Below are positions 33,171-39,419 of a stretch of DNA of 64,000 bases, one piece after another; position 1 is the stretch's first letter; the number at the start of each line of letters is the position of its first letter. The notes under the pieces were generated by a model, which saw only the letters and a program-made list of their open reading frames with translations, searched no databases and was not told the DNA's origin. The stretch spans positions 62,001 through 126,000 of IMG/VR virus record IMGVR_UViG_3300043449_002710; one strand, given 5' to 3'. The position numbers were made by a program, and so were the translations under genes.

Positions 33171-35549
33171 ATGGCAAAAACTAAGAAAGAAAAGGCTGAG
33201 TCTGCTCGCGAAGAGCGGTCTAAGGCCAGGGAAAAGAACGCCTCGAAGGCACAAGCAGATCTGATCAAGGAATACCGCGCTAAGATGCAAGCCTCGATCA
33301 ATCAGATCACCAAGAAACTCGATTGCAAGGCAATGGGTTTTGAACCACCCCAAGGAACCAATGGCGCGGTGAGCACAGGGGTTCTTTGCGTGGATCTGAT
33401 CACGGGTGGGGGGTTCCCTAAGCACCGTATGTCCACGGTGGCTGGAGACTCAGGCGCAGGCAAATCCACTTTAGTAGGCAAATCCGAAGGTACGGCTCTT
33501 CAGACGGGATTGATCTGCCATCATCTCGATCTCGAAGGCGCGGCTGACTATACCTGGATGCTCAAAAACGGAACTGACATGAATCTGTATTTGGGTAAAA
33601 GAGGCCAACCCAAGACTCTTTATTACATCCCAGATCTTCCATCTGGAGATGCTTCTTTCAGGTATATGTCTCGCGTCTTGGATGAAGCGATTGCAAACGG
33701 GGCTGAAGACCTCCCGTTTCTTTCAAATATCTTTTATCAAGACTCGATCCCGGCTTGTATCCCAGAGTCCATGCTTGAGAACGATGAAAAGGGCAATTCC
33801 CCCGACCTTGCGGTATTGACCTCTCGCGAAATTCCTCGCGTTAGAATGAAGCTGAAAAAAGCCAACGCAGCCTATGTTGCGATCAATCAAATCCGCGAGA
33901 ATCCCCGTGCGATGTTTGGTTGTTTGCATGGAGATACTCGAATTCGATTCGTAGATGGGCGAGTCCTTAAAATTAGGGATATTGTAAATCAAAAAATTGA
34001 AGGGGATATTTGGAGTTTCGATGAAAAATCTCAAACTCTAGTGCCTAAGAAAATTTTGAATTGGTTCAATAATGGCTATAGCTCTAGAGAACATTGGGTT
34101 TCGATTCGAACAGAATCTTTAGGTTCTCAACGTGGACATTATGACATTACGGTTACCCGTAACCATAAAATGCTTACCCCTTCTGGGGAATGGGTAGAAG
34201 CAGCTAGTCTCAAAGTAGGCGATAATTTGGTTAGCCAATACGAGGATCGAATTAACGGTACGTTGAGATCCTTTTTACTAGGTATGGCTGTAGGGGATTC
34301 GTCTCTGCACGAAAAATATAATCGTGGAGCCCTCACCCTTTGTAATAGGGAGCAACCTGAATACTTAGAATGGAAAGTAGACAAGTTAACCAAAGCGGGT
34401 ATTGAGTTCAAACAATACGGGGATCATGTTTTTATCTCTAAGCCACGCGCCGACTTTGAAATTTTAAGGCGGGAAACAACCAGAAGAAACCCGCTCAAGG
34501 TCTTGGATCAAATGACACCGCTGAGTATGGCTCTCTGGTTTATGGATGATGGATGTTATCATGGGAATACCCCGTTTTATAAAAATGAAAAACCTTATTT
34601 CAAACATGATGGATTCCTTTCTTTTAAACGCCTGAGAGAAGATCCGACCACTTTGGCTGGGATTGAAAAGTTTTTTAACCAAATGGGTTACTCAGGTTCA
34701 CTTTCTTCAGAGGGGGGATATCTTTTCAGTGCCGAAGGTTTTAGGAAACTCAGTCAGGATATCAGTCCGTTTGTTCCGCCTTGCATGTCTTATAAGCTCC
34801 TTCCAGAGCATAGGAATAATTACCAGGACTTTGACCTTTCTTTTGATGTGAAACAAAAAGTAGTCCCGGTAAAAATTCTTTGGGTTCGAGAGATTTCCGA
34901 CAAGAAGTCAAAAAGCTTGGGGAAATTCGATTTAGAGATTGAAGGAACCCATAATTATGTCGCTTGTAGTCAATACGGCGGTGTGGTTGTTCACAACTCG
35001 CCAATCTATGAGCCCGGGGGAAACGCACCTACTTTCTATGCGGATTTGAAGCTTTGGCTCACTCGAACCGGAAAAGCGAAAGCTTTGGACTTCAAAGGCG
35101 AGCACAAGATCACGCCCAAGGATTCCAAACTCTTTAAAGCCATGGGGGTTTCGATCGAGCAAAACCCAGATGGCACGGAAGACCGCTACTTCTACACTCA
35201 CGTCAAGACCGTCAAAAACCGAGTCTTCCCACCTTTGAAGGAAACTTACTTCAGAATGTGGATTGAAGAAAACGGTGGGGTGGGTCGCGGCATCGATCCG
35301 GTCTGGGATGTGATTCGTTTCTTTGAAGAGATCGGAATGTTGACTTTCGAGAGTATGAAAGAAGTTGTGCTCAAAGGTCAGATCTATGATTACTATGATC
35401 TGAAAAAAGAGATCCTCTCCAAGCCCGATCTTTATGAAGAAGCACGTTCACTTCTGGATTCAGGCAAAGCCTTCGATCTTTACTTCAACCGCTTGAGAGG
35501 CGGTGGTTTGGAAGTCGGTAACCCAGACCAAGAAGACGACGAAGAATAA
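33171..35549 (+). CDS. recA: RecA/UvsX-like recombinase, intein-containing
   Basis: STG...VDL..GGG.P, Walker A GDSGAGKST, Walker B-like FYQDSI, INQIREN..AMFG|SPIYEPGGNA..FYA. Confidence 0.92.
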   Translation: MAKTKKEKAESAREERSKAREKNASKAQADLIKEYRAKMQASINQITKKLDCKAMGFEPPQGTNGAVSTGVLCVDLITGGGFPKHRMSTVAGDSGAGKSTLVGKSEGTALQTGLICHHLDLEGAADYTWMLKNGTDMNLYLGKRGQPKTLYYIPDLPSGDASFRYMSRVLDEAIANGAEDLPFLSNIFYQDSIPACIPESMLENDEKGNSPDLAVLTSREIPRVRMKLKKANAAYVAINQIRENPRAMFGCLHGDTRIRFVDGRVLKIRDIVNQKIEGDIWSFDEKSQTLVPKKILNWFNNGYSSREHWVSIRTESLGSQRGHYDITVTRNHKMLTPSGEWVEAASLKVGDNLVSQYEDRINGTLRSFLLGMAVGDSSLHEKYNRGALTLCNREQPEYLEWKVDKLTKAGIEFKQYGDHVFISKPRADFEILRRETTRRNPLKVLDQMTPLSMALWFMDDGCYHGNTPFYKNEKPYFKHDGFLSFKRLREDPTTLAGIEKFFNQMGYSGSLSSEGGYLFSAEGFRKLSQDISPFVPPCMSYKLLPEHRNNYQDFDLSFDVKQKVVPVKILWVREISDKKSKSLGKFDLEIEGTHNYVACSQYGGVVVHNSPIYEPGGNAPTFYADLKLWLTRTGKAKALDFKGEHKITPKDSKLFKAMGVSIEQNPDGTEDRYFYTHVKTVKNRVFPPLKETYFRMWIEENGGVGRGIDPVWDVIRFFEEIGMLTFESMKEVVLKGQIYDYYDLKKEILSKPDLYEEARSLLDSGKAFDLYFNRLRGGGLEVGNPDQEDDEE
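33921..34997 (+). mobile_element. intein with LAGLIDADG homing endonuclease, 359 aa
   Basis: Starts C(LHGDTRI), ends VVHN followed by Ser; block B VTRNHKMLT; endonuclease blocks LLGMAVGDS and ALWFMDDG. Confidence 0.93.
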
Positions 35550-35584
35550 TTATTCTCTGCCTTAAGCCACAGAGGCAAGAGATG

Positions 35585-35633
35585 TGGCGGCTCGGCGTTT
35601 ACTTTCCTTTCTTCCGCTGGGCCGCCATTTTTT
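35585..35633 (+). terminator. probable Rho-independent terminator after recA
   Basis: TGGCGGCTCGGCG / CGCTGGGCCGCCA 13-bp stem with two G:U pairs, followed by TTTTTT. Confidence 0.6.
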
Positions 35634-35705
35634 GGGAAGTAGCTTATATGGGAGAGCACGGAGCCTAGGGCCGATGAGCGGATTCGAGCGCCGCCTTCCC
35701 AACCA
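35633..35705 (+). tRNA. degenerate tRNA-like element (pseudo-tRNA), shortened anticodon arm, encoded CCA
   Basis: Acceptor TGGGAAG/CTTCCCA + A + CCA; D-arm GCTT/GAGC; T-loop TTCGAGC; anticodon arm only 15 nt. Confidence 0.65.
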
Positions 35706-35720
35706 TTTTTAGTAAAAGAG

Positions 35721-36215
35721 ATGAGAGAGGAAATAAAAATGGAAGTTACGATTGATGTCAGAAAACTGATGACTACACTTGAGGTCATGAACCCCGAAGC
35801 CGATTTCACGCTCACCAAAGTTTATCTCTTTGACTTGGCGATGGGAAAAGAAGCTGAAGTTAAAACCCCTGCCAAGCGTGGTCGCCCCAAGAAAATTGAA
35901 GAACCTCAGATCGAAGAGTTTGTTGAAGAAGAAAAAGAACCTGAGCACGAGCAGTTGGAGCTGAATAAGATCTTATCTCCTAAGCCCAAGGCCCATTTGC
36001 CCAAAACACAAGTTGTGGTGAAAACGAATAAGACCTTAGGCAAGCCTACTCGTGAGGAAACCTTGGCCAAGAGAGCTGAGATGGAAAGACTTCGTAATAT
36101 TCCGACCAAGGAGCTTTTAGCTCAGCTCACTTCGGAAGTCCCCCGCGATGGCAATCAGTTCACAAGCGAAGGCATGGATAGCATTAGCCCAGGTGGGGAT
36201 ATTGAAATCGGTTAG
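35721..36215 (+). CDS. hypothetical protein with AT-hook-like KRGRPKK
   Basis: 164 aa, charged, low complexity. Confidence 0.65.
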   Translation: MREEIKMEVTIDVRKLMTTLEVMNPEADFTLTKVYLFDLAMGKEAEVKTPAKRGRPKKIEEPQIEEFVEEEKEPEHEQLELNKILSPKPKAHLPKTQVVVKTNKTLGKPTREETLAKRAEMERLRNIPTKELLAQLTSEVPRDGNQFTSEGMDSISPGGDIEIG

Positions 36216-39207: not shown

Positions 39208-39293
39208 GGAGAGATACCCAAGCGGCCAAAGGGACCAGACTGTAAATCTGGCGGCGTATGCCTTCGAAGGTTCGAATCCTTCTCTCTCCACCA
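39208..39293 (+). tRNA. trnY: tRNA-Tyr (GTA)
   Basis: GGAGAGA/TCTCTCC acceptor, CCAGA-CTGTAAA-TCTGG anticodon arm, long variable arm, GGTTCGAATCC, encoded CCA. Confidence 0.97.
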
Positions 39294-39343
39294 TTAAAGT
39301 TGTCTGTTTCAATTTTAAAATTTTATGTTAGTTCTTTTGGTGT

Positions 39344-39419
39344 TCAGGGATAGCTCAGTTGGTAGAGCAACCGGCTGTTAACCGGTTGGTCGGGGGTTCG
39401 AATCCCTCTCCCTGAGCCA
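39344..39419 (+). tRNA. trnN: tRNA-Asn (GTT)
   Basis: TCAGGGA/TCCCTGA acceptor, ACCGG-CTGTTAA-CCGGT anticodon arm, GGTTCGAATCC, encoded CCA. Confidence 0.97.

What the first reader, a model, noticed from the sequence alone, without database searches (positions are those of the whole stretch)
35633..35705. Cryptic tRNA-like RNA with remodelled anticodon arm and central CUA, directly after recA
Seen: a 73-nt cloverleaf with a perfect 7-bp acceptor (TGGGAAG/CTTCCCA), A discriminator, encoded CCA, U8-A9, a D-arm (GCTT/GAGC, loop ATATGGGA) and a T-loop TTCGAGC (A.G mismatch at the closing pair). The anticodon arm is only 15 nt (CGG-AGCCTAGGG-CCG), with CTA at the loop centre. The scaffold resembles tRNA-Pro as I recall it, while U1:A72/G2:C71/G3:C70 is Gln-like. 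Inference: either a decaying tRNA, or a functional tRNA mimic such as a decoy for anticodon nucleases, an uncharged-tRNA or synthetase sponge, or a weak amber read-through RNA. The intact acceptor stem and CCA with a degenerate anticodon arm argue for selection on a non-decoding role.
Basis: partly seen in the sequence, partly recalled or inferred. Interest (0 to 1): 0.75.

Follow-up and report, generated by a model that had tools for sequence, protein, structure and literature searches.

The report
Degenerate tRNA copy inserted after recA
A 73-base tRNA-derived sequence with a crippled anticodon arm was found only in this one large freshwater phage, between its recombinase gene and the next gene, and is most likely a captured tRNA copy that no longer decodes, not a proven new regulatory RNA.

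Summary
Window 35633-35705 (+) is a tRNA-derived cloverleaf and is not a chance match: a skeleton test gave 0 hits in 60 simulated genomes, and my own tRNA covariance model scored it 41.9 bits against a background maximum of 9.4.

It is clearly sub-canonical:
- The anticodon stem has 3 Watson-Crick pairs plus an A.G mismatch.
- It has C33, G32 and G38.
- The invariant G53-C61 pair is replaced by A.G.
- It is missed by ARAGORN at default settings and by Rfam's tRNA model.
- The cloverleaf is not its minimum-energy fold.

It is a singleton. All eight RecA relatives examined leave only 0-66 nt after recA, and no tRNA-like signal appears in 82 kb of syntenic DNA from seven of them. Pattern scans of viral, metagenome and genome collections found no homologue. 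It looks like a 78-nt insertion flanked by an 8-nt direct repeat, lying between the recA terminator and a conserved motif upstream of the next gene.

The 15-nt anticodon arm is 11/15 identical to the element's own T-arm core, which suggests an intragenic copy. The genome uses the standard code, and TAG is an ordinary stop. No RNA data were available.

The best reading is a captured, rearranged tRNA copy that no longer decodes (about 0.55). A functional mimic is not excluded.

The parts
33171..35549 (+). RecA/UvsX-like recombinase gene (792 aa) interrupted by a LAGLIDADG intein; ends in TAA
   Evidence: Pfam RecA, Intein_splicing and LAGLIDADG_2; PHROG UvsX-like recombinase; homologues with and without the intein
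35584..35633 (+). GC-rich hairpin (14-bp stem, 17-nt loop, 35584-35628) followed by a run of six T (35628-35633): a terminator-like end of recA. The last T is base 1 of the element.
   Evidence: Present in both the MFE and centroid folds of the intergenic region, z = -2.37. The simple terminator scan missed it because its loop exceeds 8 nt. L054 has a smaller hairpin plus T-run at the same place.
35625..35632 (+). Left copy of the 8-nt direct repeat CCATTTTT
   Evidence: Read from the sequence; the right copy is at 35703-35710
35633..35705 (+). 73-nt tRNA-derived element. Acceptor 35633-39/35695-701; D arm 35642-57; 15-nt anticodon arm 35659-73 (CTA at 35665-67); 4-nt variable region 35674-77; T arm 35678-94; ACCA 35702-05.
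   Evidence: ARAGORN at 92% threshold or lower; own covariance model 41.9 bits; skeleton test; not reported by ARAGORN default or Rfam
35659..35673 (+). Anticodon arm core CGGA-GCCTAGG-GCCG. It is 11/15 identical to the element's own T-arm core (35679-35693), with 8/8 identity in the stem including the A.G closing mismatch.
   Evidence: of 513 canonical tRNAs, only 3 reach 11/15 identity and only 2 have 8/8 identical stems
35679..35693 (+). T-arm core CGGA-TTCGAGC-GCCG, the putative template of the anticodon arm; A53.G61 replaces the invariant G-C pair
35703..35710 (+). Right copy of the direct repeat CCATTTTT (the element's CCA plus a run of five T)
35710..35718 (+). TAGTAAAAG motif upstream of the next gene, shared with relatives; a possible promoter or leader
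   Evidence: The same motif lies 14-40 nt upstream of the orthologue in L054 and L056, and more weakly in L052 and L058
35739..36215 (+). 158-aa gene of unknown function, the orthologue of the gene that follows recA in relatives
   Evidence: tblastn hits in L058, L056, L059, L052, L054 and L060; no Pfam or PHROG family

Best explanation
The element is a lineage-specific, captured copy of a tRNA gene of the Gln/Asn acceptor type. It was inserted between the recA terminator and the upstream motif of the next gene. Its original 17-nt anticodon arm has been replaced by a 15-nt hairpin that looks like a copy of its own T-arm core. It no longer works as a decoder and is most likely an evolutionary by-product.

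If it is transcribed, that happens only by read-through of the recA terminator. Its acceptor/T-arm half, U at position -1 and ACCA end would probably still let RNase P cut it out, so its main effect would be as a processing site in the recA-to-next-gene transcript.

Shown: the tRNA origin, the non-canonical anatomy, absence from relatives, the insertion-like junction and the internal repeat. Inferred: loss of decoding, the order of events and any processing.
For: - tRNA origin is established. The acceptor, A73 and CCA are identical to tRNA-Gln(CUG) of two freshwater MAGs, and the acceptor is shared with phage tRNA-Asn and tRNA-Gln.
- It is non-canonical at positions that do not vary in real tRNAs: A53.G61, C33, and a 4-layer anticodon stem with an A.G mismatch.
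- All five real tRNAs of the phage fold to the cloverleaf as their MFE. This element does not: the cloverleaf is -19.7 against -22.9 kcal/mol, and the anticodon and T stems have probabilities of 0.03 and 0.05.
- Under the same model it scores 12-22 bits below other short-armed tRNA-likes, 41.9 against 54-64 bits.
- It is absent from relatives. The gap from recA to the next gene is 0-66 nt in eight relatives, including the closest at 84% identity. The best tRNA-model score in 82 kb from seven of them is 12.7 bits.
- Pattern scans found no homologue.
- The junction looks like an insertion. The 78 nt are flanked by CCATTTTT repeats, and removing them restores the hairpin / T-run / AGTAAAA arrangement seen in L054.
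- The anticodon arm is 11/15 identical to the T-arm core.
- It sits right after a strong hairpin plus T-run, with no sigma-70-like promoter on the + strand upstream.
Against: - Fifteen of 16 stem pairs outside the anticodon arm are intact, as are nearly all tertiary-contact bases (U8, A14, G18, G19, A21, U54, U55, C56, A58). Long neutral decay would not leave this pattern, so the copy is either recent or constrained.
- The defects cluster in the anticodon arm.
- Between the two repeat units, the stems are 8/8 identical while the loops differ at 4 of 7 positions, which hints at maintained pairing (p about 0.03, post hoc).
- Other phages carry conserved, covarying tRNA-like genes with equally short anticodon arms, so a non-decoding tRNA-like RNA can be functional.
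- There are no expression or population data.
Confidence: 0.55

Rival explanations
1. It is a functional, non-decoding tRNA mimic. A stable CCA-ended RNA presents a tRNA-like acceptor/T/D core and titrates or distracts a tRNA-binding factor, such as a tRNA-cleaving defence nuclease, a synthetase, an uncharged-tRNA sensor or a repair or CCA enzyme.
For: - The acceptor stem, ACCA end, D arm and T loop are intact while the anticodon arm is remodelled.
- Conserved short-armed tRNA-like genes exist in other phages, some inside tRNA arrays, with compensatory changes in the acceptor, T and short stems. They score 48-52 bits with Rfam's tRNA model.
- One family has the same arm layout: 3 pairs, a purine-purine mismatch and a 7-nt loop.
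- Phage tRNAs are known to counter tRNA-targeting defences (PMC10264068, PMC11464382, PMC11555353).
Against: - It is a singleton with no homologue or covariation.
- Its arm is not significantly similar to any short-armed family.
- The G53-C61 pair is kept in the conserved family but broken here, and the T stem is predicted to be unstable.
- The known counter-defence tRNAs remain canonical decoders.
- No RNA ligase or CCA-adding enzyme was found in the 81%-complete genome.
- It lies behind a terminator.
Confidence: 0.2
2. It is an mRNA punctuation or processing element under selection. The tRNA-like fold is kept because cleavage by RNase P and 3' trimming separate the recA message, with its protective hairpin, from the downstream message.
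For: - The acceptor/T-arm half, U at position -1 and the ACCA end, which are the features bacterial RNase P uses (established knowledge), are all present.
- The phage's real tRNA-Tyr and tRNA-Asn are likewise embedded between protein genes, starting 8 nt after a stop codon.
- In relatives, recA and the next gene abut or overlap, which implies co-transcription.
Against: - Relatives manage without it.
- The conserved TAGTAAAA motif may be a promoter, which would make processing unnecessary.
- There are no transcript data.
Confidence: 0.12
3. It is a weak glutamine-inserting amber suppressor, with CUA read as the anticodon.
For: - CTA sits at positions 34-36 of a 7-nt loop in the ARAGORN fold.
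- The pairs U1-A72, G2-C71 and G3-C70, plus A73 and CCA, match the phage's own tRNA-Gln and a MAG tRNA-Gln(CUG).
- The anticodon arm aligns without gaps to positions 28-42 of that MAG tRNA (9/15 identical), with CTG in place of CTA.
- Standard-code phages sometimes acquire suppressor tRNAs (bioRxiv 10.1101/2021.08.26.457843).
Against: - The anticodon stem is one pair short and has an A.G mismatch.
- C33 replaces the near-universal U33, and positions 32 and 38 are both G.
- Coding density is already 92.5% under the standard code.
- TAG ends about 16% of genes, with a median of 7 codons to the next stop, shorter than after TAA or TGA.
- None of the four canonical CUA tRNAs seen in other phage loci has such an arm.
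Confidence: 0.05
4. It is a chance cloverleaf in intergenic DNA.
For: The MFE z-score is -0.2. Relaxed ARAGORN gives many false hits. Rfam is silent.
Against: There were 0 skeleton hits in 60 simulated genomes. The element scores 41.9 bits against a background maximum of 9.4. Its 27-nt 5' part and 13-nt 3' end nearly match real tRNAs.
Confidence: 0.01

Closest known systems
Canonical bacterial and phage elongator tRNA (Rfam RF00005), especially tRNA-Gln and tRNA-Asn with a U1-A72 acceptor
   Same: It has a 7-bp acceptor identical to real tRNA-Gln(CUG), tRNA-Gln(UUG) and tRNA-Asn genes. It also shares U8, the D arm with G18 and G19, the TTCGA T loop, a 4-nt variable region, A73 and an encoded CCA.
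   Different: The anticodon arm is 15 nt instead of 17. It has C33, G32 and G38, and A53.G61 replaces the invariant G-C pair. It is not reported by Rfam or by ARAGORN at default settings, and the cloverleaf is not its MFE.
tRNA pseudogenes and non-canonical tRNA gene copies in prokaryote and phage genomes (PMC9897764)
   Same: It is tRNA-derived, scores below threshold, lies at a variable junction and has no orthologues.
   Different: It is full length, not a 3' fragment left at an integration site. Its lesion is a discrete replacement of one arm, apparently copied from its own T arm.
   Same: Both are 73 nt with only 25 nt between the D stem and the T loop. Both have an arm of 3 pairs, a purine-purine mismatch and a 7-nt loop. 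Most members encode ACCA.
   Different: That family is conserved in more than 25 contigs, shows compensatory changes, keeps G53-C61, often sits in tRNA arrays and scores 48-52 bits with Rfam. The window element is a singleton, and its arm similarity to the family is not significant.
Phage-encoded amber suppressor tRNAs of TAG-recoded phages (bioRxiv 10.1101/2021.08.26.457843; PMC9523058)
   Same: Both are phage-borne with a CUA triplet at the loop centre and a Gln-type acceptor.
   Different: Those tRNAs are canonical cloverleaves in genomes with in-frame TAG codons. This genome uses the standard code, and the element's arm is non-canonical.
Phage tRNAs that resist or replace targets of anticodon nucleases (PMC10264068, PMC11464382, PMC11555353)
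   Same: Both are phage-encoded with an altered anticodon loop.
   Different: Those tRNAs keep canonical geometry and still decode. No defence context or repair genes were found here.

Membership tests
Canonical tRNA (RF00005) | 7-bp acceptor stem, discriminator base and a CCA-capable 3' end | tested here: met
   Seven Watson-Crick pairs, with A73 and CCA encoded
Canonical tRNA (RF00005) | D arm and T loop carrying the tertiary-contact bases (U8, A14, G18, G19, A21, U54, U55, C56, A58) | tested here: met
   All are present; compare the invariant columns of A2
Canonical tRNA (RF00005) | 5-bp anticodon stem with a 7-nt loop, U33 and a purine at position 37 | tested here: not met
   The stem has 3 Watson-Crick pairs plus A.G. 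Position 33 is C and position 37 is G.
Canonical tRNA (RF00005) | 5-bp T stem closed by G53-C61 | tested here: not met
   The pair is A53.G61, while G53 and C61 are invariant in 46 tRNAs
Canonical tRNA (RF00005) | Score at or above the family gathering threshold (29 bits), or an ARAGORN call at default settings | tested here: not met
   There is no Rfam hit even at E<=10. ARAGORN calls it only at 92% threshold or lower. My own model gives 41.9 bits, but it was trained on tRNAs partly fetched with patterns taken from the element.
Amber suppressor tRNA of recoded phages | CUA at positions 34-36 in a canonical anticodon loop | tested here: inconclusive
   CUA is central in the loop, but the loop has C33, G32 and G38 and the stem is short
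Amber suppressor tRNA of recoded phages | The genome has in-frame TAG codons, or depleted TAG stops | tested here: not met
   ORF cover is 92.5% under the standard code. TAG ends 42 of 261 stops, with short extensions.
Amber suppressor tRNA of recoded phages | Aminoacylated and active on the ribosome | not testable with these tools
   This needs charging and reporter assays
tRNA pseudogene / degenerate tRNA copy | Clear descent from a tRNA gene | tested here: met
tRNA pseudogene / degenerate tRNA copy | Loss of features needed for function | tested here: met
   Anticodon arm, U33 and G53-C61 are lost, and the cloverleaf is not favoured
tRNA pseudogene / degenerate tRNA copy | No conservation beyond the lineage | tested here: met
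   Limits: the collection scans used exact patterns, and the closest relative was available as gene calls only.
tRNA pseudogene / degenerate tRNA copy | Not expressed or not processed | not testable with these tools
   No RNA run was listed. The only DNA run held is kept as contigs.
   The element's loop is AGCCTAGGG. The best arm similarity to any short-arm sequence falls within the shuffle range. Its T arm is not canonical.

The most novel reading that the evidence does not exclude
The element is an independent example of an undescribed class of phage RNAs: CCA-ended tRNA-like molecules that keep the acceptor, D and T core but carry a shortened, non-decoding anticodon arm. Such RNAs would act as decoys or sponges for tRNA-binding host factors, for example tRNA-cleaving defence nucleases. 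Here the two hairpins with identical CGGA/GCCG stems would be the recognised feature.
Probability: 0.15. Interest if true: 0.75.

Novelty: new member of a known kind. Interest (0 to 1): 0.3.

Why it matters
As it stands the element is a curiosity. It shows how a phage can pick up a tRNA gene at a recombination-prone junction and how one arm can be overwritten by an intragenic copy.

It would matter more if shown to be expressed and stable. Together these would point to a class of non-decoding tRNA mimics in phages, relevant to the current work on tRNA-targeting anti-phage defences.

The practical lesson for annotation is that such elements fall between detectors. Rfam and default ARAGORN miss this one, while a relaxed ARAGORN threshold is flooded with false hits.

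Tried and rejected
- **Amber recoding.** Rejected. Coding density is high under the standard code, TAG is a normal stop, and there are no long extensions after TAG.
- **Chance cloverleaf.** Rejected.
- **Homologue searches that found nothing:**
  - blastn against phage records.
  - Protein-guided search of IMG/VR with the RecA C-terminal extein (the part after the intein), and with a 13-sequence RecA alignment, which returned only relatives at 25-33% identity.
  - Exact-pattern scans for the anticodon arm, for the T arm plus acceptor, and for a loop-anchored pattern.
  - A metagenome scan, which gave one hit that proved to be high-GC coding DNA without a cloverleaf.
  - A genome scan for the D arm.
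- **Relatives' whole records.** These could not be searched.
- **Homology to a short-armed family.** Not supported, and widening that family by its loop motif added no new lineages.
- **Repeat of the hairpin or element elsewhere in the genome.** None found.
- **Antisense ORFs over the element.** No family hits.
- **tRNA repair or CCA-adding genes in the genome.** None found; the RNA_lig_T4_1 search was uninformative because its control found nothing.
- **Expression and microdiversity.** No RNA run was listed, and the single DNA run holds one identical contig.
- **Unexplained.** Rfam's tRNA model is silent even in an 83-nt search, although my model gives 41.9 bits and overscores comparable RNAs by only about 8-12 bits.
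- **Not available.** tRNAscan-SE was not among the tools.

Full report
**Setting.** The window is part of a 223,260-bp IMG/VR virus record. It is estimated 81% complete, has 46% G+C and comes from a freshwater metagenome. The gene ending at 35549 is a RecA/UvsX-like recombinase of 792 aa that carries a LAGLIDADG intein. The next gene on the same strand starts at 35739, so the intergenic gap is 190 nt. That gap holds a small hairpin, then a strong GC-rich hairpin (14-bp stem, 35584-35628) followed by six T, then the element, then five T.

A relaxed ARAGORN hit is weak evidence by itself, since at 80% threshold it 'tRNAs' in 113 kb of related phage DNA. I therefore ran two independent tests.
- A skeleton test required a perfect 7-bp acceptor, U8, a T stem of at least 4/5 pairs, a TTCRA loop and NCCA. 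It hit three sites in the genome (tRNA-Gln, the element and tRNA-Asn) and none in 60 simulated genomes.
- A covariance model built from a gapless alignment of 46 canonical tRNAs, run with filters off over the whole window, scored the element 41.9 bits (E about 4e-10). That lies between tRNA-Asn (86.9) and tRNA-Tyr (40.1), and the next best site scored 9.4 bits.

The training set was partly fetched with patterns taken from the element, so this score is somewhat flattering. Comparable RNAs score about 8-12 bits higher with my model than with Rfam. The element is therefore certainly tRNA-derived.

**How tRNA-like is it?** Less than it looks.
- Rfam's tRNA model reports the five real tRNAs of the genome at 53-73 bits but never reports the element, even at E<=10 in an 83-nt search. 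I could not explain this silence fully.
- G53 and C61 are invariant, and T33 nearly invariant, in the 46-tRNA alignment. The element has A53, G61 and C33, plus G32 and G38.
- All five genuine tRNAs of the phage fold into the cloverleaf as their minimum-energy structure. The element keeps only the acceptor and D stems. Its cloverleaf is 3.2 kcal/mol worse than an alternative long hairpin, and the anticodon and T stems have ensemble probabilities of about 0.03 and 0.05.
- Under the same model, other short-armed tRNA-like genes score 54-64 bits, 12-22 bits above the element.
- The encoded CCA and A73 are not distinctive. All five real tRNAs encode CCA, and three have A73.

**Where does it come from?** The acceptor TGGGAAG/CTTCCCA is typical of phage tRNA-Asn(GTT) and tRNA-Gln(TTG) genes in IMG/VR. 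Among 185,579 species genomes, the same acceptor with A73 and CCA occurs in tRNA-Gln(CUG) of two freshwater MAGs and in one Akkermansiaceae tRNA-Pro(TGG). The phage's own tRNA-Gln shares the top four pairs, A73, CCA and a 4-nt variable region. The element's anticodon arm aligns without gaps to positions 28-42 of the MAG tRNA-Gln(CUG) (9/15 identical), with CTG in place of CTA. The D arm, however, is of the Asn/Phe/Lys type, so the parent isotype stays ambiguous.

A more telling relationship is internal. The 15-nt arm CGGA-GCCTAGG-GCCG is 11/15 identical to the element's own T-arm core CGGA-TTCGAGC-GCCG, with 8/8 identity in the stem including the odd A.G closing mismatch. Among 513 canonical tRNAs, only 3 reach 11/15 and only 2 have identical stems. 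This suggests that the anticodon arm was overwritten by an intragenic copy of the T arm. That would explain three things at once: its length of 15 nt instead of 17, the shared mismatch, and the competing long-range fold.

**Is it conserved?** No.
- A protein search found 17 RecA relatives at 49-84% identity. I examined contigs of eight of them. In all of these the next gene overlaps recA, abuts it, or starts within 66 nt, including the closest relative, for which only gene calls were available.
- The 158-aa gene downstream of the element is the orthologue of the gene that follows recA in those phages. In some relatives one or two extra small ORFs lie in between, so this junction is variable.
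- The tRNA model with filters off found nothing above 12.7 bits in 82 kb of syntenic DNA from seven relatives. ARAGORN at default settings found no tRNA there either.
- Exact-pattern scans of IMG/VR, 241 million metagenome records and the species genomes found no homologue. The single metagenome hit is a chance match in high-GC coding DNA.
- These scans need exact matches at the specified positions, so diverged homologues could be missed.

**Junction anatomy.** In L054 the recA stop is followed by a small hairpin, then CCAC, TTTT and AGTAAAAAGGAG, then the orthologue's start. In the window the large hairpin ends in CCA and a T-run. The element follows and itself ends in CCA and a T-run, and then comes AGTAAAAGAG. 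The element thus lies between two copies of CCATTTTT (35625-32 and 35703-10). Deleting one copy together with the 70 nt between the copies (78 nt in all) restores the arrangement seen in the relative. The repeat is short and T-rich, so it is only suggestive of microhomology-mediated capture or a target duplication. The motif (T)AGTAAAAAGG recurs 14-40 nt upstream of the orthologue in several relatives, even when another ORF precedes it. It may be a promoter or leader. If it is a promoter, the element sits in the spacer between a terminator and a promoter and would be transcribed only by read-through.

**Decoding?** Unlikely. The genome has 92.5% ORF cover under the standard code. In a crude set of 261 genes, TAG ends 42, and the in-frame extension after TAG has a median of 7 codons, shorter than after TAA or TGA. 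An anticodon stem one pair short, with an A.G mismatch and C33, departs from features that are essentially universal in decoding tRNAs (established knowledge; compare). Four canonical CUA tRNAs seen in other phage loci all have normal arms. Suppressor tRNAs in standard-code phages have been reported as possible intermediates towards recoding (bioRxiv 10.1101/2021.08.26.457843), but those are canonical tRNAs.

**A functional mimic?** This cannot be excluded. While looking for relatives, I scanned IMG/VR for tRNA 5' parts with only 25 nt between the D stem and the T loop, and found about 100 loci. Many are tRNA-like genes with perfect acceptor and T stems but shortened anticodon arms.

One family occurs in more than 25 contigs, with acceptor GCAGACG, loop GCGCCRGGA and usually ACCA.
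- It has the same arm layout as the window element: 3 pairs, a purine-purine mismatch and a 7-nt loop.
- It often lies inside tRNA arrays.
- It scores 48-52 bits with Rfam's tRNA model.
- It shows compensatory changes in the acceptor, T and short stems. Nine pairs have changes on both sides, and 0 of 500 shuffles reached the observed values, although this rests on only about three independent lineages.

Non-decoding tRNA-like genes can therefore be maintained in phages. The window element is not demonstrably homologous to any of them, and unlike them it has a broken G53-C61 pair. No CCA-adding enzyme or RNA ligase family was detected in the genome. No RNA run holding this sequence was listed, and the single DNA run shows one identical contig without variants.

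**Verdict.** The element is real and tRNA-derived, but sub-canonical, lineage-specific and probably inserted. I rank the readings as follows.
- About 0.55: a captured tRNA copy whose anticodon arm was replaced, apparently from its own T arm, and which no longer decodes. If read-through transcripts include it, the intact acceptor/T half, U at -1 and ACCA make RNase P cleavage plausible. That step is inference.
- About 0.2: a functional non-decoding mimic.
- About 0.12: a selected processing element.
- About 0.05: a weak Gln-type amber suppressor.
- About 0.01: chance.

The good preservation of 15 of 16 stem pairs outside the remodelled arm means the copy is either young or constrained. Only orthologues or expression data can tell which.

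Noticed in passing
IMG/VR loci L062-L160 (e.g. L064:4323-4395, L071:923-995(-), L099:1499-1571, L119:1824-1896): About 100 phage loci carry tRNA-like genes with only 25 nt between the D stem and the T loop. One conserved family (acceptor GCAGACG, 9-nt loop GCGCCRGGA, mostly with an ACCA end) occurs in more than 25 contigs, often inside tRNA arrays between tRNA-Thr or tRNA-Phe and tRNA-Gly. It shows compensatory changes and scores 48-52 bits with Rfam's tRNA model, but ARAGORN does not call it. Other types have a 5-bp stem with a tetraloop (L105, L122, L088) or a 4-bp stem with a 6-nt loop (L075, L086). I found no description of these in the papers searched.
   Followed up: partly
window 39208-39419: Adjacent tRNA-Tyr(GTA) and tRNA-Asn(GTT) genes start 8 nt after a protein gene. 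Seven relatives have no tRNA within 5 kb of recA. Both tRNAs have G34-U35 anticodons, the class cut by some anticodon nucleases (established knowledge), so they may be counter-defence cargo.
   Followed up: no
window 33171-35549: The RecA/UvsX-like recombinase is split by a LAGLIDADG intein of about 350 aa. The intein is present in some relatives (P0003, P0008-P0010) and absent in others, including the closest one (P0002).
   Followed up: partly
window 35710-35718 and L054, L056, L052, L058 upstream of the 158-aa orthologue: A conserved (T)AGTAAAAAGG / GGTAAAA motif lies 14-40 nt upstream of the start codon, even when a different ORF precedes it. It may be a phage promoter or leader element.
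   Followed up: partly
IMG/VR loci L003, L009, L006, L011, L017, L022, L026, L038, L047, L049, L051: Many phage tRNA 5' halves (GGGAAGTAGCTCAG..GGTAGAGCA) are followed, from about position 27-37, by long non-tRNA sequence that recurs between contigs. These may be intron-containing or split tRNA genes.
   Followed up: no
window 35633-35705: Rfam RF00005 gives no hit even at E<=10 in an 83-nt search, while my own canonical-tRNA model gives 41.9 bits. The discrepancy is larger than the 8-12 bits seen for comparable RNAs and remains unexplained.
   Followed up: partly
L228:4962-5035, L229:6048-6121: Two freshwater MAG contigs carry a tRNA-Gln(CUG) with exactly the element's acceptor, A73 and CCA, in AT-rich surroundings. 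This may be a clue to the host lineage, or the contigs may themselves be phage-derived.
   Followed up: no
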